Part shown: piece after piece, positions 2,560 to 61,294 of the stretch
How the letters are laid out: each line of letters starts with the position of its first letter
Numbering within the stretch: position 1 is the stretch's first letter
NCBI RefSeq assembly: GCF_006345805.1
Contig: NC_043005.1
Span: 100,564,001-100,628,000, forward strand
From: Octopus sinensis
Lineage: Eukaryota
Direction: 5' to 3'
Length of the DNA stretch: 64,000 bases
Translations under genes and position numbers: made by a program
Notes under the pieces: model-generated
Database searches by the model: none
Seen by the model: only the letters and a program-made list of their open reading frames with translations
What the model was told of the DNA's origin: nothing

Positions 2560-3097
2560 TAATCAAAATCAAAATCAAATCAAAATCATTTCGATGACTG
2601 GCATCTGTGCTAGCGGGATGCAAAGAGCACCATACGAGTGTGATCGTTGACAGAGAGGCTATTCGAGTACGATCGTTACCAGCATCGCCTTGCTGGCACT
2701 TATGCCTGTGCTTGTAGGGTGCCAAGAACACCATCCGAGCATGATCGTTGCCAGAGTAGCCAACTGGCTTCCATACCCGTGGCACATAAAAGGGCACCAT
2801 TTCGAGCGTGATCGTTACCAACGTCGCTTCACTGGCACCTGTGTTGGTGGCACGTGTAAAAAGATTTGAGTGAGGTCATTGCCAGTACTGCCTGACTGGT
2901 CCCCGTGCAGGTGGCACGTAAAAAGCACCCACTACACTCTTGGAGTGGTTGGCGTTAGAAAGGGCATCCAGCTGTAGAAACTCTGCCAGATCAAGACTGG
3001 AGCCTGGTGCAGCCATCTGGTTCGTCAGTCCTCAGTCAAATCATCCAACCCATGCTAGCATGGAAAGCGGGCGGTAAACGATGATGATGATGATGAT
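2560..3097 (+). mobile_element. RTE-type 3' UTR copy, variant subfamily with ~60-bp internal repeats and (GAT)n tail
   Basis: Repeated caccatccgagcgtgatcgttaccag units, then the shared tail; similar copy at 16860-17242. Confidence 0.8.
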
Positions 3098-8690: not shown

Positions 8691-11146
8691 ATGAATGGGA
8701 TAAAGAGAGTCTGCCAAATGTTGACCCAACAGAGGGACCAGCTATCCGAGTTGATAGTTCCGTAGTAGCTAAGGCGTTTAGGAGCATGAAGACAGGGAAA
8801 GCCCCAGGCCCATCAGGAATTACTGCAGAGATGCTCAAAATATCTGGCAGTGTCGGCTATAACCTAGTCACCCGTATAGTCAACCAGGTGATACACGAAG
8901 GAGTCATACCCATGACTGGTGTAGCAGCATACTAGTCAACTGCTACAAAGGTAAAGGTGATGCCCTGGATACAAATAATTACAGAGGTATCAAGCTGTTG
9001 GATCAGGTAATGAAGGTTACGGAGAGGGTCTTAGCCCAACTAATTAGAGAGAGAGTTAGTTTAGATGAGATGCAGTTTGGGTTTGTCCCAGGGAAAAGCA
9101 CCACTGATGCTATATTCCTGGTAAGGCAGCTGCAGGAGAAATACCTAGCCAAGGATAAGCCCCTGTACCTGGCTTTTGTTGACATGGAGAAAGCCTTTGA
9201 TAGGGTCCCCCGATCCCTCATCTGGTGGTCAATGAGGAAACTAGGGATAGATGAATGGCTGGTGAGGGCTGTGCAAGCCATGTACAGAGATGCCGTAAGT
9301 AAGGTTAGAGTTGGCAACATGTACACAGAAGAATTCAAAGTAGAGGTTGGGGTCCACCAGGGTTCAGTACTCAGCCCCCTCCTATTTATCATAGTCCTCC
9401 AGGCAATAACGGAGGAATTCAAGACCGGTTGCCCCTGGGAGCTCCTCTATGCTGACGACCTCGCTCTAATCGCTGAGTCACTATCAGAACTGGAGGAGAA
9501 GTTCCAGGTGTGGAAGGAGGGTTTAGAATCGAGGGGCCTTAGAGTCAACCTAGCTAAAACCAAAGTACTAATAAGTAGAAAGGTAGAAAACCCACAAATA
9601 TCATCAGGAAGATGGCCCTGTTCGATCTGTAGAAAAGGTGTAGGTAGAAACTCTATAAGATGTACCCAGTGTAAGCTATGGACACATAAGAGGTGCAGCA
9701 ATGTCAAAGGTAGGCTAACTGGGAAGATAGTTTTTGTATGTGGCAGGTGCTCTGGAGCACTGACCTCCGAAAATCTGCAGAAAACAACTTCTGTCACTTT
9801 CCGGGGGGAAAACTAGAAGTAGTTGATAGTTTCCGCTATCTAGGTGACCAAGTCAGTAGTGGGGGTGGGTGCGCTGAAAGTGTAACTGCTAGAATAAGAA
9901 TAGCCTGGGCAAAGTTTAGGGAGCTCTTACCTCTGCTGGTGACTAAAGGCCTCTCGCTCAGAGTAAAAGGCAGACTGTATGATGCATGTGTACGAACAGC
10001 TATGCTACATGGCAGTGAAACATGGGCCGTGACTGCTGAGGACATGCGTAAGCTCGTGAGGAACGAAGCCAGTATGCTCCGATGGATGTGTAATGTCAGT
10101 GTACTTACTCGACAGAGCGTTAGTACCTTGAGAGAAATGTTGTACCTAAGAAGCATCAGTTGTTGTGTGTGCAAGAGAGACGATTGCGCTGGTATGGTCA
10201 TGTGGCGAGAATGGATGAAGAGAGGTGTGTGAGAAAGTGCCAATCCCTAGCAGTTGAGGGAACCGTGGAAGAGGTAGACCCAGGAAAACCTGGGACGAGG
10301 TGGTGAAGCACGACCTTCGGACGTTAGGTCTCACCATGGAAATGACTAGAGACCGAGACCTATGGAAGTATGCTGTGCGTGAGAAGACCCGGCAAGACTA
10401 GTGAAGCCATAATCCGTGGCCCCTACCTGGGACGTAGTCAGTCCACCTGTGCATACCTTCCTTCTTGTGACACTTGTGAAGACCTGTTGAGGCAAGTGAG
10501 AATCGAATCGAATCGTATCAAATCAAATCGAACCAAATCAAAATAGATGAACATCAATGGAATTTGTATCCTTGTGGTACCAGTGCCGGTGGCACATAAG
10601 AAAACCATCCGAACGTGACCGTAGCCAGTACCGCAATGACTGGCCTCCGTGCTGAGGGCACGTAACAAACACCATCCGAGCGTGGCCGTCCGCCAGCCTC
10701 GTCTAGCACCTAAGAAAACACCATCCGAGCGTGGCCGTCTGCCAGCCTCGTCTGGCACCTGTGTCGGTGGCACATAAAAAACACCATCCGAGCGTGGCCG
10801 TCTGCCAGCCTCGTCTGGCACCTGTGTCGGTGGCACATAAAAAAAAACACCATCCGAGCGTGGCCGTCTGCCAGCCTCGTCTGGCACCTGTGTCGGTGGC
10901 ACATAAAAAACACCATCCGAGCGTGGCCGTCTGCCAGCCTCGTCTGGCACCTGTGTCGGTGGCACATAAAATCACCCACTACACTCTCGAGTGGTTGGCG
11001 TTAGGAAGGGCATCCAGCTGTAGAAACACTGCCACATCTGACTGGCCTGGTGCAGCCTTCGGGCTTCCCAGACCCCAGTTGAACCGTCCAACCCATGCTA
11101 GCATGGAAAGCGGACGTTAAACGATGATGATGATGATGATGATGAT
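8690..11146 (+). mobile_element. 5'-truncated RTE-clade non-LTR retrotransposon inserted in (TA)n
   Basis: RT motifs KAPGPSG, NNYRGIKLL, QFGF, FVDMEKAFDRVP, GVHQGSVLSPLLF, LLYADD; C-terminal GRPRKTW; ~740-bp 3' UTR ending in (GAT)n. No APE endonuclease region. Confidence 0.95.
8692..10401 (+). pseudogene. RTE ORF remnant (RT, Cys/His PHD-like insert, C-terminus) broken by small frameshifts
   Basis: Supplied ORFs 8998-9816 and 9738-10232 join across a frameshift near 9810; further shifts near 8911, 10170 and 10265; stop TAG at 10399-10401. Confidence 0.9.
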
Positions 11147-12274
11147 ATATATATATATACATATATATAAATTTATATAAATAAGGGTAAGAATGTTATT
11201 TAAATATTGAACTTATCAAGTGGCCAGCATGGGAATATAAACCTTCAAAGGTAATTATTATTAAAATTATAATTTAGGGTATCTAAGAGATACCCTAGAT
11301 TATAATTTTAATAATATGTACAGATATATACATATATATATGTATGCATGTACATATATATATATATGTATATATCAGTGGGTGCCTGTTTAGTCTCTTT
11401 CCTTCATGACTACTTTCCTTTATCTACATCAGTTTTGTGGAGCTTCTGTATGATGGGTTAGAGTTAGCCAGCTTCTTCAGCTCGGTTGTGTAGAATTTGT
11501 CATGATACATGTGCCATGAAATTTGATCGAGGACATCACTGTCAGCGTTTGCACATTCATTCATTACATTATCAATTTGACAGTAGATGGGCACACCTTT
11601 GAGCATAAATGACAGGAGTATTCAACAGGGGTTTATAGAACTTTTGTGCACATGAGCATCATTTTATAGCAAATAATACTGGCTTTTGTAAGCATAATAT
11701 GACCACAAATGGTACGAGTGAGAGCACTTCTGGATGGATTTTTGCTCTGTACAAACCCCACAATTCTCAAGAATTTTGTTGCCATTTCATTTCACTATTT
11801 TGTATTCAATTCAGCTTATCTCAAATTGCAAGCAATATCCACTGGCTAGAGGCCTTAGTTATGTTTTGATGACAAGATGTTCCCTATCATCAGTTAAATA
11901 TTTTAAAGATTTCTTTTTGTGACATCACGAAACCTCATTCTTGCTTGTACTAGGGATGCTTATGGAGAAATAATTCACGATAAGATAATCGCTTTGATCA
12001 CTTAAAACTCAAGAAAGATATTTCGTAAAAATTTGATGATGACCGGACTTGCTGTGTGCAATTAGGGCAGCAAAGGGAACACCAAGAGTTGCAGCTTTGA
12101 GTTTTCCTCTCATTTGCCTTTGTATCTCACACAGAAACACATAATTGCATATCATCATTTTTTATTTAAGTACTGTGTTAACCCTTCGTCATTCTACACC
12201 ATCACACCACACACACACACACACTCTCTCTCTCTCATCACTCCACCTTGTCATATTTAACTTAATTTAATTAG

Positions 12275-14704: not shown

Positions 14705-14942
14705 CATCATATCATCATCATCGTTGAACGTCCACTTTCCATGCTAGCATGGGTTGAACGATTTTGACTGAGGTCTGGCGAACCAGATGGCTGCACCAGG
14801 CTCCAGTCTTGATCTAGTAAAGTTTCTATATAGCTGGATGCCCTTCCTAATGCCAACCACTCTGAGAGTGTAGTGGGTGCTTTTTACGTGCCACCGGCAC
14901 GGGGGCCAGTCAGGCGGTACTGGCAACGACCTCACTCGAATC
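14705..14942 (-). mobile_element. RTE 3' tail copy
   Basis: catcatcatcgttgaacgtccactttccatgctagcatggg... is the reverse of the shared tail. Confidence 0.85.
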
Positions 14943-16859: not shown

Positions 16860-17242
16860 TGGCACATAAAAGGCACCATTCGAGTGTGATCATCACCAGC
16901 GTTGCCTTACTGGCACTTGTGCCCATGCTAGTAGGGTACCAAGAGCACCATCTGAGCGTGATCGTTAACCGTGTCACCTTACTGGCACCTGTGCTGGTGG
17001 CATGTGTAAAAAGATTCGAGCAAGGTCATTGCCAGTACCGCCTGACTGGCCCCCGTGCTGGTGGCACATAAAAAGCACCCACTACACTCTCGGAGTGGTT
17101 GGTGTTAGGAAGGGCATCCAGCTGTCGAAACTCTACCAGATCAGATTGGGGCCTGGTGTGGCGATCTGGTTCGCCAGCCTTCAGTCAAATCGTCCAACCC
17201 ATGCCAGCATGGAAAGTGGATGTTAAACGATGATGATGATGA
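16860..17242 (+). mobile_element. RTE-type 3' UTR copy, variant subfamily
   Basis: Same ~60-bp units and (GAT)n tail as 2560-3097. Confidence 0.8.
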
Positions 17243-36111: not shown

Positions 36112-37398
36112 TTGGGTTGTCCAGAAAGTTTGTGCAGATTTTTAAAGGAAAGAAAACAGTCAATAAATACTTGCCATTACATTTTTAATCAACCAAAGAT
36201 GAACTATTTTGTTGCACAATGCGTCTCCATCTTTCCTTTAACTTGAAAATACCCTCTTCCAAGAATCGAGGTGGTTTCATGGCAAAGAATTCATCAAGGT
36301 ATCTATTTACGTCATCCAAGGAATTGAAATTTTTACCATTAAGACTATTCTGCAGAGACCAGAATAAGTGGAAATGCAAAGGAGCAATATCTGGTGAATA
36401 TGGAGGGTGGGGTAACACATCCCAGCTGAGCTGCAGCAATTTTTGTCTGGTTCCCAAAGAAATGTGTGGTCTTGCATTATCATGTTGGAAAATAACACCC
36501 TTCTTGTTGGCCAATTCTGGACGTTTCTCTTGAGTAGCTGCTTTTAACTCATCCAGTTGTGTGCAGTATTTCTCAGAGCTAATTGTCTGGTTACTTGGGA
36601 AAAGCTCATAGTACAGAATTCCTTTCCAATCTCTACACAAAGCAAAATTTTTTAGGGTGAAGACCCGCTTTTGGGGTGGCTAAGGGTGCCTCATGTCGCT
36701 TACTCCAGGATTGCTTTCTCTCAACATTTCGGTAGATAATCCATTTCTCATCACCTGTCACAATTTGCTTTAAAAAAGGTGCGTTTTCATTCCAGTTATA
36801 AAGTGAATCACAGATGAAAATACGATCCAAAAGGTTCTTCTCACTCAACTCATCTAGTACCCAAACATCGTAGTGATTTGTGTACCCAAGCTTTCAAGCT
36901 TTACCAGGTGCTCACAAATGATGGATTTTGGTATGTTGAGGCTTTCTGCCAATTGTTAGGTCGTGCAATGTGGGTTATTCTCAATTAATGACTTGATTTG
37001 GTCATCATCTGTAGTGGATGGTCTACCTGATCGCTCTTTATCAATAAGGCTACAATCTCCAGCTCAGAACCTTCTGAACCACTTCTGTACAGTTCTTTTG
37101 AATAAAGAAACATCACCATAAACTGCGCATATTTCTTTGGTTACTTGTGAGGCATTTTTCCCTTTATGGAAAAAGAAAAGCATCAAGTGCTGAAAATGAA
37201 CTTTCTTATCTTCCATTTTAAAGGGTTACAGAATTAACACAGGTTATAGGAACACAAACCTTCTTCCACGAAAGGATTGCTTAAACTGTACTCTAAATGG
37301 AGGTGTAGTCAAATCCTGTTTTATGGACTCAACCATCTTCTAAAATAAGTCGAAAGGTAAGCTACTATAAATCGGCATGAACTTTCCGGACAACCCAA
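36112..37398 (-). mobile_element. Full-length (1287 bp) decayed mariner transposon, DD34D type
   Basis: TA|TTGGGTTGTCC[A/G]GAAAGTT TIRs at both ends with TA TSDs; IVTGDEKW, FQHDNARPH and HPPYSPDIAP motifs in ORFs 36633-36848 and 36185-36640; frameshifts and stops. Confidence 0.95.
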
Positions 37399-40915: not shown

Positions 40916-41210
40916 ATATATCATCATCATTGTTTAACGTCCGCTTTCCATGCTAGCATGGGTTAGAAGATTTTGACTGAGGGCTGGTGGACCAGATGGC
41001 TGCACCAGGCTCCAATCTTGATTTGGCAGAGTTTCTACAGCTGGATGCCCTTCCTAATGCCAACCACTCCGAGAGTGTAGTGGGTGCTTTTTATGTGCCA
41101 CCGGTACAGGGGCCAGTCAGGTAGTACTGGCAATGACCTCACTCAAATCTTTTTACACATGCCACCAGCACAGGTGCTAGTAAGGCTACGTTGGCAATGA
41201 TCACACTCGA
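40915..41210 (-). mobile_element. RTE 3' tail copy
   Basis: Reverse of the shared tail. Confidence 0.85.
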
Positions 41211-51570: not shown

Positions 51571-51975
51571 TTAGTTTTGTCTTGTTGAGAACATGGTAAC
51601 CTCTCCAGTGTTGGTGCCATCATGAAATACACCCATCACACTCTATAAAGTTGTTGTTGGCATTATTATGAAGAGCATTCAGCTGTTAGAAGCAAAATCA
51701 AAAACTAAATGTATGATCCACCTAGGAGGGTAGAAACTCTGAATAAGAGTTGAGTAAGACTATGTTGATGATGATGATGAGGATAAGGATGATGGTGATG
51801 GTGATGTCCAATATTACTGTTTGTGATTGTGATTGTTGAAATGTCAGATTATATTTCATTGCAAGTTGTAAATACACAATTAAAATAAAATGAGTCGAGC
51901 CAAATATTATCGAATTCTCAGAACAAACTAAGTTGTTACCTTAGTTTGTCCTGAATATATATATATATATATATC

Positions 51976-52218
51976 ACAATTGCAGCGTGGAAGGTGTTTA
52001 TAAGCCATTTAAGAAACACACAAAAGCCGTTCGATTCACTTCAACATTTAAGTTTAATTTGTCAAAATATTTTCGTCGCTTTAAGACCGCGACCTGTTCA
52101 CTGACAAAAAATCCGTGCAGCACGGATTTTGACAAATTAAACTTAAATGTGGAAGTGAATCGAACGGCTTTTGTGTGTTTCTTAAATGGCTTATAAACAC
52201 CTTCCATGCTGCAATTGT
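51976..52218. repeat. Palindrome: 93-bp arms (51976-52068, 52126-52218), about two mismatches
   Basis: acaattgcagcgtggaagg...tttgtcaaaat versus attttgacaaa...ccttccatgctgcaattgt; the two near-identical antiparallel ORFs at 51987 and 51998 arise from it. Confidence 0.95.
52058..52108 (-). ncRNA. Putative minimal type I hammerhead ribozyme, G3:C8 core variant
   Basis: Minus strand: UUUGUCA-GUGAACA-G-GUCGC-GGUCUUAAA-GCGAC-GAAA-AUAU-UU-UGACAAA. 7-bp helix I, 5-bp helix II, palindromic helix III loop. Confidence 0.65.
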
Positions 52219-52397
52219 TTTCGTTTCAGCACACGATCTCAGATCAAATTACTTGCTATGCGAGTACATCTCCGTAATATATATATATATATAAGAAAAT
52301 GTAAATATAATACAAATATGGCTGTTAAGTTGATGCACTTTTTAAATAACATGGAGCACACTGACACTCTACTTTCAGTTCAGCAGTCATTGTATTG

Positions 52398-52660
52398 TGA
52401 TCATCATCATCATCGTTTAACGTCTGCTTTCCATGCTAGCATGGGTTGGATGATTTGACTGAGAACTGGCGAACCAGATGGCTGCACCAGGCTCTAATCT
52501 TGATCTGGCAGAGTTTCTACAGTTAGATGCCCTTCCTAATGCCAACCACTCCGAGAGTGTAGTGTGTGCTTTTACGTGCCAGTGGCACAAAGACTGGTCA
52601 GGTGGTACTGGCAATGGCCACAATCGAAATGGCATTTTCTTACGTGCCACCTGCAAAGGA
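52398..52660 (-). mobile_element. RTE 3' tail copy between the PLE ORF and the palindrome
   Basis: Reverse of the shared tail. Confidence 0.85.
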
Positions 52661-52712
52661 GTCAGTCCAGTAATTATTGTACAGAGTAGTAGTAGTAGTA
52701 GTAGTAGTAGTA

Positions 52713-53111
52713 GAGGCCTTTCACATAGGGTAGATAGACTGTGGATAGTTTATCGGTTTCGTCCTCTCTTTTCTTCATAATTAGAGTGGAGAGTATGCTT
52801 TTGGGGTAGTTATTGTTAAATAGATTGTTACTGAGCTTAATCATTTCTTCGTGGTGGGTATCAAGGTCGCTACTTATATTCATTGCTCGATGTTTTAGGC
52901 ACTGAGCAATCCCTCTCTTTACACTGTGTGGATGGTGGGAACTGAAGCTGAGGTATCGTCTCATGAAGGTCGTCTTGCGGTATATGGATGTCCTGAATCC
53001 ATACTTAGTGTGTGTTATTAATACATCCAGGAATGCTAGCTGATAGTCTTTTTCTTTTTCCATTGTGAACTGTATGGATGGCTTCATTGAGTTCACATGA
53101 TCTAACAGCAC
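52713..53111 (-). mobile_element. Penelope-like element fragment (RT C-terminus, thumb and linker)
   Basis: LLDHVNSMKPSIQFTMEKE..LAFLDVLI..SIYRKTTFMRRYLSFSSHHP..KRGIAQCL..RA..YPKSI..VYLPYVKG is the typical PLE pattern; open for ~133 codons, ends in (CTA)n before any GIY-YIG motif. Confidence 0.85.
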
Positions 53112-53123
53112 TTGGACTTAAAC

Positions 53124-54499: not shown

Positions 54500-54775
54500 T
54501 GCCAGTCTTGCCTGGCCTCCGTGCCAGTGGCACGTAAAAAGCACCATCCGATCGTGGCCGTTTGCCGGCCTCGTCTGGCACCTGTGCCGGTGGCACATAA
54601 AAGCACTCCCTACACTCACGGAGTGGTTGGCGTTAGGAAAGGCGTCCAGCCGTAGAAACATTGCCAGATCAGACTGGGCCTGGTGCAGCCTTCTGGCTTC
54701 CCAGACCCCAGTTGAACCGTCCAACCCATGCTAGCATCGAAAGCAGACGCTAAACGATGATGATGATGATGATGA
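54500..54775 (+). mobile_element. RTE 3' tail copy
   Basis: One ~60-bp unit plus the shared tail and (GAT)n. Confidence 0.85.
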
Positions 54776-58659: not shown

Positions 58660-58850
58660 TCATCATCATAATCATTTAACGTCCGCTTTCCATGCTAGCA
58701 TGGGTTGGACGATTTGACTGAGGTCTGGTGAACCAGATGGCTGCACCAGACTCCAATCTGATCTGGCAGAGTTTCTACAGTTAGATGCCCTTCCTAACGC
58801 CAACCACTCCGAGAGTGTAGAGGGTGCTTTGACATGCCACTGGCACGAGG
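58660..58850 (-). mobile_element. RTE 3' tail copy
   Basis: Reverse of the shared tail. Confidence 0.85.
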
Positions 58851-61294
58851 GCGAGTCAGGTGCAATATTCACCATAACAGAACAGGTTATTTGTATTGCT
58901 ATTGTTTTTAACAAAATAAACACAGAAAACCTCAACAAAGAAAGTAATAGAACCAGAGCCCTTTTTCTGTCTCATCAAACTAATGAAACAAAGCACCACA
59001 CATGCCATACTGCTATGAATATGGGTAAAGTGAGGAGAGGAGGATTAGGGTTTTTGTTTTATGAACACAACTAATAGAACCAACAAGAAGTTACATTCAT
59101 AAAGGAAAAGAGAAGATCTGTTAATTACCTTCAGTAATTATTCTGACTCAGTGCGTCAGTAGCAATGACCATCCTTGCTGTATTAGCACAGCCAACAATG
59201 GAAATGAATTGGCCAGTGAAAAGAATAGGTAGAATGCAACTGAAAAGGAATGTAAATTCTTCAATATCACCCACAGAATGTGGCACTTCAGTAGAACCAA
59301 AAGCTCAATTCAAATAAAGATATTCATAAACTTTACCCCATGTAACGAGCTATATTTTCCTCTTTCATCTACAAACTGTGTGTGTATGTGAGTGAGTGTG
59401 TGTATGTGAGTGAGTATGTTTATGTGTGTGTGTGTGCAAGTGCGTATGCGTGCACACACACACGATTCCTTTCCACAAATAATATTTTGGACAACTAGTT
59501 TACCAGAATTGTAATTCCAAGTTTCTATCTTAGATGAACAATTACATTTTATCAAAAATGTAGTCATGTTTTAGCCTTCTCCAGACTTTGCAATTAAATT
59601 AGAGGTAAGTGGTTATTATAATCATTTATCGTAAGGAAATGGACAATTTTGGAAGGATGATAGTTTAATAGTCTTCTCTCTGACTGGTCATTATTTTAAT
59701 ATACTGAAGGATGAAACTTAAAGACATAAAACAATAAGAGTGGTGGTGACGGGTGACGGTGATGGTGCTGGTGGTATATACTTTGGTTATTACTTGATAA
59801 GTGAGATGAAAAGTCAGTTTGGTGAGGAGAGCAGTGATAATGAAATGTTTCCACACAACTGTATTACCGATTCCAATGTTATTTATACTGGATGGGTGAA
59901 GAGCACAACTGGCATCAGTAAAATTTGATCGGAGAAACATGGTAACAACTTAAATATTGTGGAACATTGGGGATCTTCAGTCTCAGTTATCTAAATTATG
60001 GATAATATTAAATGATTATAAGATTAACTAAACAAAAAATAATAATAATAATATTGAAGATAATGGTAAAAACAAGTTTGAAAATAGCTTTGACCAGAAA
60101 AAAGAAAACAGTTAAGTTTACAAGACAAGACTGTTAAAAGACTGGACGGCAATCATTGCTGATTTGATGGTAGATTCTATGACACTCAGTGTGGGATTAC
60201 AATTCTAAACTCAAATTATGCTGATATCCACCGATTTTAACTTCTGTAGCCGATAATAAGAAAATATTTATTTTTTGCGGAGACTTAATCTTCTGCTATA
60301 TCAGGCAGATTAACTTGATGTCTGGACAATTTAAATCCGTTTCTGCCAAACTTTCTGAAAGTGTCTTCTCTCTAATAATTTGAATCAAACTCTATCTTCA
60401 AGAGAATCTGACCTCAGAATTTTGGCCGAATATTCATTACTCTATTTTCATGTTTTGCTTCTTTACAGTTCATTATTTCTTTATATCATTATGTGAAAAT
60501 AAAATAAATTTCTCAAGATACCTAGAAGATAAGAAGATATAATATGATGCCATTAAGGATTATTTTGATTATTCTATCCAGACATTTAATCCTATGCCTT
60601 CAGTATTTTTTTCCTTTCTTTAACTTCACAAAGTTTGCTAAACTCAAGATTATGACTGAGAAATCCTTGCTCAAGTAGTACAGAAGCAATAATTCTAATA
60701 ATAAAAACCATACAAGTATATAGGTTTCACTTCTTTATATCAATTAAATTTTTCTATCTTTTATTTACTGTAGATCTGATATTTATTGTTCTTTTATTGT
60801 TCTTAGCCAAAAATGTTATACAACATAAAGTTGCAGTAGAATATTGCTCTATTTGATAGAAAGAAAAATATGATTTTTAAAATCAGATTAATTTAAAATC
60901 ACTATTGTTTATTATTTTCTAATGGAATTTGAAGTTTTAGACTCGCTATAGTTTATAAAAATATAGTTCAATGACATTTACAGCAAACAAACACTGACAT
61001 TGCATTAGTAGGGGGCTAAAAGGTGAGATAAGGGTTCATTTAAGAATTAAGAATTCCAGGTGAAAATAAATCTGGTATCTATTTTCTATTAATTATTCCA
61101 GGTAAAAATCAATCTGGTACCTATTTTCTATCCTGTGCAGAATAAATTATCTCAACAATGTCTGTGATAACACCAAAAAGGGGATTCTTAACGATCTCCC
61201 AACTGGTGTACTTCGATATAACTACATTAGTAAAATGACGACAATTACTATAATAGAATCTAAAATATATAAACATATAAAGTAAAAAGTGAAG

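What the first reader, a model, noticed from the sequence alone, without database searches (positions are those of the whole stretch)
52058..52108. Hammerhead-like motif with G3:C8 swapped core and a perfect 7-bp helix I
Minus strand folds as UUUGUCA/UGACAAA (helix I), GUGAACA core, GUCGC/GCGAC (helix II), GAAA, then A-U closing a palindromic AUAU loop. The only two changes within the CUGANGA segment are the two that preserve the 3:8 pair, which argues against random decay. It lies 3' of, and on the same strand as, the PLE RT fragment. The predicted triplet is UUU (cut between 52065 and 52064), a weak NUH type, so activity may be low.
Basis: partly seen in the sequence, partly recalled or inferred. 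Interest (0 to 1): 0.8.

Follow-up and report, generated by a model that had tools for sequence, protein, structure and literature searches.

The report
Hammerhead-like motif in octopus foldback repeat
A 51-base stretch that looks like a minimal hammerhead ribozyme with two paired core bases swapped is really there and is the consensus of a small octopus repeat family. It is not the neighbouring retrotransposon's ribozyme, it is locked inside a long hairpin in this copy, and whether it cuts RNA is untested.

Summary

[quoted passage not shown] It gave 0 hits in 1846 shuffles and 0 hits with 47 decoy cores on 130 kb of cephalopod DNA.

Two further loci of the same repeat were found (Octopus sinensis L001, and Logan contigs L009-L012). 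The majority consensus of four motif copies is UUUGUCA GUGAACA G GUCGC ... GCGAC GAAA AUAUUU UGACAAA. So GUGAACA is the family state, not a private double mutant.

Evidence against an active ribozyme here:
- The neighbouring PLE piece is an internal fragment cut by a SINE. Its relatives carry a different, canonical hammerhead (CUGAWGA ... GAAACGUU).
- The other copies of the motif have decayed at the neutral rate.
- Helix I's 3' strand lies in a 93-nt, 98% complementary arm, so helix I has pair probability of at most 2e-4.
- No second same-strand copy exists in the window for dimer formation.

Verdict: a hammerhead-type motif, about even odds of true hammerhead descent, and probably inactive in this copy.

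The parts
52058..52108 (-). Hammerhead-like motif. Helix I 5' strand 52102-52108; G3 U4 G5 A6 A7 C8 A9 = 52101-52095; extra G 52094; helix II 52089-52093 with 52075-52079 and loop 52080-52088; G12 A13 A14 A15.1 = 52074-52071; AUAU 52070-52067; U16.1 52066; U17 52065; helix I 3' strand 52064-52058.
   Evidence: Read directly. It is the only hit of the strict PLE-type descriptor in the window. It is identical to the 4-copy consensus except in loop 2.
51976..52068 (.). Left arm of the 93-nt inverted repeat. On the minus strand this is the 3' 'tail' of the repeat. It contains helix I's 3' strand.
   Evidence: 98% complementary, 57 nt between the arms. (whole foldback -163 kcal/mol, z = -24).
52126..52218 (.). 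Right arm of the inverted repeat, an inverted copy of the tail. It carries the competing UUUGUCAAAAU at 52126-52136.
52108..52130 (-). Small central hairpin AAAAUCCGUG-CUG-CACGGAUUUU followed by a U run. It stands where the L009 copy has an inverted second copy of the core.
   Evidence: Comparison with L009.
52219..52277 (-). 'Head' of the repeat (UUACGGAGAUGUAC...GCAAGU...CUGAAACGAAAA). It is conserved in L001 and L009.
51967..52277 (-). Whole host repeat as delimited by homology to L009 551-903: head + inverted tail + centre + core + tail.
   Evidence: 69% over 355 columns. The head-arm junction is shared with L009.
51955..51975 (.). (TA)n tract at the 3' side of the repeat. It corresponds to CATAAATATCATTG in L009.
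52277..52293 (.). (TA)n tract at the 5' side of the repeat.
52395..52700 (+). Octopod SINE copy with a (GTA)n tail. It separates the repeat from the PLE fragment. It is context, not part of the motif.
   Evidence: about 12 copies in the window, 77-90% identical..
52715..53116 (-). Internal fragment of a Penelope-like element ORF, running from just after the YVDD motif to before the GIY-YIG domain. It is context, not connected to the motif.
   Evidence: 72% aa identity to O. sinensis LOC118763458. (85.5% nt identity to L001 5948-6349). (no other PLE coding remnant in the window).

Best explanation
The motif is the ancestral, consensus-level feature of a small interspersed octopod repeat of about 310-350 nt. 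The repeat consists of a head followed by a long palindrome, whose half-unit holds a three-way-junction-like core and an approximately 90-nt tail.

The core has the architecture of the minimal type-I hammerheads of Penelope-like elements: helix I, a 7-nt core strand, one unpaired nucleotide, helix II opening with G10.1:C11.1, GAAA, a self-complementary A-AUAU-U instead of a real helix III, then U17 and helix I. The one difference is that the C3:G8 pair is swapped to G3:C8.

I think it most likely descends from such a hammerhead, that is, from a PLE-derived or retrozyme-like non-autonomous element. If it works, it would work as those motifs do: two copies pair through the palindrome to build helix III, probably helped by protein, and the RNA is cut after U17 (between 52065 and 52064).

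In this genomic copy the 3' strand of helix I is captured by the 93-bp foldback and there is no second same-strand copy. I therefore expect this copy to be inactive or nearly so.

Shown: the sequence, its rarity, its family consensus, the competing fold, and its independence from the neighbouring PLE. Inferred: hammerhead descent and the cleavage mechanism.
For: 1. Eleven of 13 invariant hammerhead positions are present, and the two that differ are the mutually pairing 3 and 8.
2. Three non-descriptor hallmarks of metazoan PLE minimal hammerheads are met: a nucleotide between 9 and 10.1, G10.1-C11.1, and palindromic 15.x-16.x (PMC4209133). A natural U3-A8 covariant is already known there.
3. 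The strict descriptor gives 1 hit in the window, 0 hits in 1846 dinucleotide shuffles and 0 hits for 47 permuted-core decoys on 130 kb of real cephalopod DNA.
4. Three loci (four motif copies) have the intact motif with GUGAACA, GAAA and UGACAAA as their majority consensus. No copy has CUGANGA.
5. Helix II pairs in 20 of 20 cells, with CG, UG and UA at one pair.
6. [quoted passage not shown]
7. Genuine PLE hammerheads in L001 and L002 also use U17, and their palindrome is barely stronger (-5.7 versus -4.6 kcal/mol).
8. The motif lies about 90 nt from the repeat's 3' end. The genuine ones lie about 55-65 nt from theirs.
Against: - No copy with a canonical core links the family to known hammerheads.
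- The repeat shows no homology to any PLE, and no RT gene lies next to it in L001/L008.
- The three other motif copies each carry 3-5 changes at critical positions, which is the neutral rate. L009 direct has C8A9 changed to AC and G12 to A. L001 has lost U4G5, has A13 changed to G, and has CC inserted in helix I. L009 inverted has U8 and AAGU for GAAA.
- Covariation is not significant (77 of 500 shuffles), and the one compensatory change is two CpG transitions.
- Helix II is 5 bp, against 6-8 bp in PLE motifs.
- No tandem or nearby same-strand partner exists in the window.
- Helix I pair probability is at most 1.7e-4 once the upstream arm is transcribed.
- In the isolated 51-mer the best fold shifts register and pairs G3 with U17.
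- The strict descriptor was written after seeing the candidate.
- Rfam gives no hit. This carries little weight, because Rfam also misses the genuine PLE hammerheads.
Confidence: 0.45

Rival explanations
1. The resemblance is coincidental. The repeat is a palindromic (foldback) element whose relevant property is its long hairpin, at the DNA or RNA level. The local hairpin and flanking complementary 7-mers merely happen to frame sequences that look like a hammerhead core. Nothing is cleaved.
For: - A loose descriptor hits 4 sites in the window and 0.8 per shuffle, so hammerhead look-alikes are common.
- The dominant structure is the 93-bp stem. The palindrome is ancestral to the window and L009 copies. 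It is kept at 98% in the window against 77% in L009.
- Critical positions decay at the neutral rate in the other copies.
- There is no PLE homology and no tandem partner.
- No natural G3:C8 hammerhead turned up in the few papers read; that none has been described rests on my own knowledge.
Against: - The combination of a Watson-Crick 3:8 pair, an extra nucleotide, G10.1:C11.1, GAAA, a palindrome, U16.1 and H17 with 7-bp and 5-bp helices gave 0 hits in 1846 shuffles and with 47 decoys. My estimate is about 3e-4 per window at the descriptor's thresholds.
- These features were defined in the literature, not by this sequence.
- The motif is ancestral to the family.
Confidence: 0.4
2. It is the hammerhead of the adjacent Penelope-like element, meaning the pLTR ribozyme belonging to the RT fragment at 52715-53116.
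For: It lies on the same strand, about 600 nt 3' of the RT fragment. PLE hammerheads lie 3' of the ORF. In L002 a deleted PLE copy has its hammerhead only 80 nt after an RT fragment.
Against: - The window's PLE piece ends at 52715, before the endonuclease domain. Nothing further in the window matches the PLE protein or its 3' region.
- A SINE and unrelated sequence intervene.
- The same PLE lineage in L001 and L002 has a conserved canonical hammerhead, CUGAWGA-A-GGCYGG...CC-GAAACGUU-GUG. It has no similarity to the motif's surroundings.
- The host repeat occurs without an adjacent same-strand PLE in L001 and with no PLE in L009.
Confidence: 0.03
3. The host repeat is a tRNA-derived SINE or other retroposon whose sense strand is the plus strand, or a hairpin locus that yields small RNAs. 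On this reading the minus-strand motif is antisense and irrelevant.
For: - The plus strand has an A-box-like TTGCAGCGTGG (51979-51989) and a B-box-like CGTTCGATTCA (52027-52037) about 40 nt apart. Simple-repeat tracts follow the plus-strand 3' end in the window and L001.
- Weak Rfam similarity to MITE-type miRNA hairpins reflects the stem.
Against: - The box matches are imperfect and the B-box is not conserved in L001 or L009.
- No tRNA or SINE model hit was found.
- The (TA)n tract corresponds to ordinary sequence in L009, so it is not a tail.
- No expression data are available.
Confidence: 0.1

Closest known systems
Minimal type-I hammerheads of metazoan Penelope-like elements (min-HHR; Cervera & de la Pena 2014, PMC4209133)
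   Same: - Open helix I.
- One unpaired nucleotide between A9 and 10.1.
- G10.1:C11.1.
- No real helix III, only a self-complementary 15.x-16.x segment suited to dimer formation.
- Position near the 3' end of a repeat.
- A 3:8 covariant (U3-A8) exists in this class.
- U17 is used by the cephalopod examples found here.
   Different: - The core pair is G3:C8, which to my knowledge is not reported in nature.
- Helix II is 5 bp, not 6-8.
- Helix I is 7 bp, not 2-5.
- The host repeat has no PLE homology and is a palindrome.
- No second same-strand copy is nearby.
C3G/G8C double-mutant hammerheads made in the laboratory (Martick & Scott 2006 as cited in, and repeated on an Anolis Poseidon PLE hammerhead by, PMC11167929)
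   Same: The same swapped pair. Either single change kills cleavage and the double change partly restores it. The PLE hammerhead needs protein to cleave.
   Different: Those are engineered changes in an otherwise canonical, proven ribozyme. Here the swap is the natural consensus of a family whose activity is unknown.
Metazoan non-LTR retrozymes (Cervera & de la Pena 2020, PMC7229834)
   Same: Small (170-400 nt), AT-rich, highly self-paired units that carry a type-I hammerhead with a weak palindromic helix III. They are thought to be non-autonomous PLE derivatives.
   Different: Retrozymes occur as tandem arrays with canonical cores and loop-loop contacts. All three loci here are single units, and the suspected terminal redundancy was not significant.
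Genuine PLE hammerhead of the neighbouring PLE lineage (L001 6937-6992; L002 6524-6575 and 4986-5010)
   Same: The same overall layout, and U17.
   Different: Canonical CUGAWGA, an ACGU palindrome, and unrelated flanks. It is absent from the window because the PLE copy there is truncated.

Membership tests
Hammerhead ribozyme (any type) | Invariant core C3 U4 G5 A6 N7 G8 A9 / G12 A13 A14 / A15.1-U16.1 / H17 | tested here: not met
   U4 G5 A6 A9 G12 A13 A14 A15.1 U16.1 U17 are present. C3 and G8 are replaced by G3 and C8, so the pair is kept but the identities are not.
Hammerhead ribozyme (any type) | Three helices around the core | tested here: inconclusive
   Helix I is 7 bp and helix II is 5 bp. 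Helix III is only A15.1-U16.1 as a monomer, and a 6-bp AAUAUU duplex is possible only in a dimer.
Hammerhead ribozyme (any type) | Match to the Rfam hammerhead covariance models | tested here: inconclusive
   No hit at the gathering score or at E<=10. Rfam also misses the genuine PLE hammerheads in L001 and L002, so the negative result says little.
Hammerhead ribozyme (any type) | Site-specific self-cleavage 3' of position 17 | not testable with these tools
   This needs in vitro transcription or mapping of RNA ends.
PLE-type minimal hammerhead | Unpaired nucleotide between A9 and 10.1 | tested here: met
   G at 52094. The other copies have G, U and C there.
PLE-type minimal hammerhead | G10.1-C11.1 closing pair | tested here: met
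   52093 G pairs with 52075 C. The pair is GC in 4 of 4 copies.
PLE-type minimal hammerhead | Palindromic 15.x-16.x segment or loop 3 | tested here: met
   A-AUAU-U (52071-52066) is self-complementary. It is kept in L009 direct and L001.
PLE-type minimal hammerhead | Lies in the flanking repeat (pLTR) of a Penelope-like element | tested here: not met
   The host repeat has no homology to the PLE 3' regions or proteins. The adjacent PLE fragment is truncated, and its relatives carry a different hammerhead.
PLE-type minimal hammerhead | Forms a consensus family with compensatory changes in the genome | tested here: inconclusive
   Only 3 loci (4 copies) could be reached. The consensus keeps the motif, but covariation is not significant.
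PLE-type minimal hammerhead | A second copy in tandem or nearby to allow the dimeric fold | tested here: not met
   No other copy of the motif or repeat exists in the 64-kb window. L009 has a second copy, but on the opposite strand.
Non-LTR retrozyme | Tandem repeats of 150-450 bp, each with a canonical type-I hammerhead | tested here: not met
   All loci hold single units. The apparent terminal redundancy was no better than shuffled sequence, or was driven by (TA)n. The core is not canonical.
MITE / foldback DNA transposon | Terminal inverted repeats at the element ends, flanked by a target-site duplication | tested here: not met
   The conserved 'head' lies outside the arms, so the arms are not terminal. 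No duplication flanks the arms.

The most novel reading that the evidence does not exclude
Octopods harbour a previously undescribed family of small palindromic, PLE- or retrozyme-like elements. Its master copy encodes a working hammerhead with a natural G3:C8 core pair. In the older, fuller palindrome (L009) the hammerhead domain is present on both strands facing each other, as in the hammerhead arm of viroid-like circular RNAs. To my knowledge this would be the first natural hammerhead with the swapped 3:8 pair. It would also mean that searches fixed on C3/G8 have been missing whole families.
Probability: 0.15. Interest if true: 0.7.

Novelty: new variant of a known kind. Interest (0 to 1): 0.45.

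Why it matters
Searches for hammerheads fix C3 and G8, so families with another Watson-Crick pair at 3:8 go unseen. Only a U3-A8 family in Schistosoma PLEs was found, and that by homology.

A natural G3:C8 family would have three consequences:
- It would show that the pair, not the identity of the bases, is what evolution keeps. This agrees with the crystal-structure-based double-mutant rescue.
- It would widen the catalogue of ribozyme-bearing retroelements to cephalopods.
- It would offer a natural test case for protein-assisted or dimer-dependent cleavage.

If the motif is only a look-alike, the case is still useful. It shows how close a non-ribozyme repeat can come to the minimal descriptor.

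Tried and rejected
- **Rfam.** I ran it at the gathering score on the window and at E<=10 on 1.2 kb and on 111 nt, and found no hammerhead. I rejected this as evidence after it also missed the true PLE hammerheads.
- **Loose descriptor as proof of chance.** Rejected, because the two mismatches here are the 3:8 pair and the PLE-specific features are rare.
- **Other copies in the window.** None were found.
- **Metagenome scan with a 19-mer of the arm.** It gave three chance hits in GC-rich (50-68% G+C) contigs, two of them at 68% and evidently bacterial.
- **Word-indexed protein search with the 69-aa ORF across the foldback.** Nothing was found. The exhaustive HMMER search did find one translated copy.
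- **Extra octopus DNA.** L007 (O. vulgaris, 21 kb) and the wider L008 held no further copies.
- **The repeat as a more-than-unit tandem, retrozyme-like.** The repeated starts are not better than shuffles, or are driven by (TA)n. L009 has no second unit.
- **Homology beyond the repeat's ends between the window and L001.** None was found.
- **An RT gene upstream of the L001 copy.** None was found.
- **The foldback as private to this window.** Rejected, because L009 shares the head-arm junction.
- **A palindrome-preserving covariation in the L009 inverted copy (ACAUGU versus AAUAUU).** Rejected, because the two palindromes are in different registers.

Full report
**What is there**

On the minus strand, 52108..52058 reads UUUGUCA GUGAACA G GUCGC GGUCUUAAA GCGAC GAA-A AUAU U U UGACAAA. 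On its own the 66-nt stretch 52115-52050 around the motif folds into helices I and II (-14.7 kcal/mol, z = -2.1). The exact reader structure for the 51-mer scores -12.4 kcal/mol. The optimum for the 51-mer, at -13.8 kcal/mol, shifts helix I by one position and pairs G3 with U17.

**Surroundings**

The motif sits in the centre and left arm of a large foldback. The arms are 51976-52068 and 52126-52218, 93 nt each, 98% complementary and 57 nt apart. Helix I's 3' strand, U17 and U16.1 lie inside the left arm. The true partner of that arm (52126-52136) contains a second UUUGUCA.

- A transcript covering the foldback folds at -163 kcal/mol (z = -24) using the arms.
- Helix I then has a pair probability of at most 1.7e-4.
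- It forms (0.95) only if the RNA starts downstream of 52126.

The window comes from an octopus. The PLE-like ORF at 52674-53111 is 72% identical to Octopus sinensis LOC118763458. A LINE RT in the window is 81% identical to an O. vulgaris protein.

The PLE piece is an internal fragment. Nucleotide homology to the O. sinensis copy L001 runs only from 53116 to 52715 (85.5%). No other PLE coding remnant exists in the window. At about 52700 the fragment runs into a (TAC)n tract and a plus-strand SINE (52395-52700, about 12 copies in the window).

**What the neighbouring PLE's real hammerhead looks like**

In L001 the same PLE continues through its GIY-YIG domain to about 6770. About 170 nt further on it carries GACAC CUGAUGA A AGCUGG..UCAGCC GAAACGUU GUGUU. 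Two related copies in L002 have CUGAAGA A GGCCGG..CC GAAACGUU GUG, one on each strand. The three 3' regions align, and homology ends about 55-65 nt after the hammerhead.

These are textbook PLE 'minimal' hammerheads with a canonical core, and they are unrelated in sequence to the candidate. So the candidate is not this PLE's ribozyme. Rfam detects none of these genuine motifs. Its silence on the candidate therefore carries little weight.

**Why the motif cannot simply be dismissed**

Cervera & de la Pena (PMC4209133) list features of metazoan PLE minimal hammerheads that were not in their search descriptor:
- a G10.1-C11.1 pair;
- palindromic 15.x-16.x positions, suited to dimer formation.

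They also report a natural U3-A8 covariant. The candidate has all three listed features, and the 'extra G' is one of them.

A loose descriptor (up to 2 core mismatches anywhere) is uninformative: 4 hits in the window against 0.8 +/- 0.85 per shuffle. I then wrote a descriptor with these requirements: U4 G5 A6 and A9 fixed, any Watson-Crick pair at 3:8, 0-1 extra nucleotide, G10.1:C11.1, helix II of at least 4 bp, GAAA, a palindromic insert, U16.1, H17, and helix I of at least 5 bp. The results were:
- it hits only the candidate in the window;
- it gives 0 hits in 1846 dinucleotide shuffles;
- with 47 decoy cores made by permuting the fixed bases, it gives 0 hits on 130 kb of real cephalopod DNA.

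My back-of-envelope estimate is about 3e-4 per window at the thresholds, and lower at the candidate's helix lengths. The descriptor was written after seeing the candidate, so these numbers overstate the case. Its components do come from the literature, however.

Biochemically, C3G or G8C alone abolish cleavage and the double change partly restores it. This includes an Anolis PLE hammerhead that needs its protein to cleave (PMC11167929).

**The host repeat and its other copies**

A diverged copy lies in L001 at 11237-11420 on the minus strand (69% identity). It is about 4 kb from the PLE there and on the opposite strand.

An exhaustive protein search with the 69-aa ORF that spans the foldback found one translated copy, P0137. 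Its DNA is one locus recovered from four Logan runs (L009-L012, 99.7-99.9% identical). The contig is AT-rich, has no ORFs, and ends in simple repeats. It is probably genomic.

L009 551-903 aligns with window 52277-51967 across the whole structure, including the junction between the 'head' and the inverted arm. The palindrome is therefore ancestral to both copies. L001 is a derivative that lost the upstream arm.

In L009 the palindrome is longer (131-nt arms, 77% complementary). It includes a second, inverted copy of the core, so the motif occurs on both strands there. The window has a small hairpin (52108-52130) in its place.

The four motif copies read:
- Window: UUUGUCA GUGAACA G GUCGC..GCGAC GAAA AUAUUU UGACAAA
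- L009 direct: UUUGUCA GUGAAAC G GUUGC..GCGAC AAAA AUAUUU UGACAAU
- L009 inverted: UUUCUAA GUGAAUA U GUCGC..GCGAC AAGU ACAUGU UGACAAA
- L001: UUUGUCA --GAACA C GUUGC..GCAAC GGAA AUAUUA UGCCACAAA

Their majority consensus is the intact motif, identical to the window copy except in loop 2. No copy shows CUGANGA.

**What the copies do not show**

Each non-window copy has 3-5 changes at the 14 critical positions, about 26%. That equals the overall divergence, as expected for dead copies. Helix II pairs in 20 of 20 cells and helix I in 89%. The only double change (C-G to U-A) is two CpG transitions. The covariation score is reached by 77 of 500 shuffles. The 3:8 position reads G:C, G:U, G-A and a gap. 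This gives no evidence of selection for a ribozyme, and none against it.

The window copy's three lineage-specific changes within the motif all fall in loop 2. That is suggestive, but they may be a single event. I found no homology of the repeat to any PLE, no adjacent RT gene, no tandem arrangement and no further copies in another 40 kb of octopus DNA.

**Conclusion**

The motif has the architecture of a PLE-type minimal hammerhead with a swapped 3:8 pair. It is improbable by composition alone, and it is the consensus of a small palindromic octopod repeat.

It is not the hammerhead of the adjacent PLE. The foldback should keep this particular copy from folding that way, and it has no partner for the dimeric form. 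I put about 45% on true hammerhead descent, about 40% on coincidence within a hairpin repeat, and well under 10% on this copy cleaving by itself. If the family is real, it would be a new variant of a known kind.

Noticed in passing
window 52395-52700 (+); also 2831-3094, 14711-14940, 16981-17242, 40920-41174, 54583-54770, 58660-58862 and others: An abundant SINE of about 270 nt with a (GTA)n tail, about 12 copies in 64 kb at 77-90% identity. One copy cuts the PLE fragment next to the finding.
   Followed up: partly
window 10438-10965 (-): A 175-aa ORF made of four tandem copies of PPTQVPDEAGRRPRSDGVF(Y)V. By eye it resembles an internal segment of the same SINE amplified in tandem; this was not checked.
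   Followed up: no
window 8998-10232 (+): LINE reverse transcriptase with a PHD-type zinc finger, 81% identical to an O. vulgaris protein. Its best database hit (79%) is filed under a 'Herbaspirillum sp.' metagenome-assembled genome on a 1.5-kb contig. That is probably animal DNA mis-binned as bacterial.
   Followed up: partly
window 36185-36640 (-): C-terminal fragment of what looks, by eye, like a mariner-type transposase (an unconfirmed reading of the DDE region; no domain or homology search was run).
   Followed up: no
L001 6937-6992; L002 6524-6575 (+) and 4986-5010 (-): Genuine PLE minimal hammerheads (CUGAWGA-A-GGCYGG..CC-GAAACGUU-GUG) with a U17 cleavage triplet GUU. In L002 they form an opposite-strand pair about 1.5 kb apart. 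Rfam models do not detect them.
   Followed up: yes
L001 2411-2450 (+): Another CUGAUGA...GAAA arrangement with only 3-bp helices. It was picked up only at the loosest thresholds.
   Followed up: no
window 52103-52130 (-): Hairpin AAAAUCCGUG-CUG-CACGGAUUUU followed by a U run. It looks like a terminator (a weak Rfam match to a leader terminator). It occupies the place of the inverted core copy seen in L009.
   Followed up: partly
window 51979-51989 and 52027-52037 (+): A-box-like TTGCAGCGTGG and B-box-like CGTTCGATTCA on the plus strand of the host repeat. A plus-strand Pol III retroposon is not excluded, although the B-box is not kept in the other copies.
   Followed up: partly
window 51976-52218 versus L009 621-883: The window's palindrome arms are 98% complementary, while the homologous, commonly inherited palindrome in L009 is only 77%. 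This suggests recent homogenisation of the stem in the window's lineage, or selection for it.
   Followed up: no
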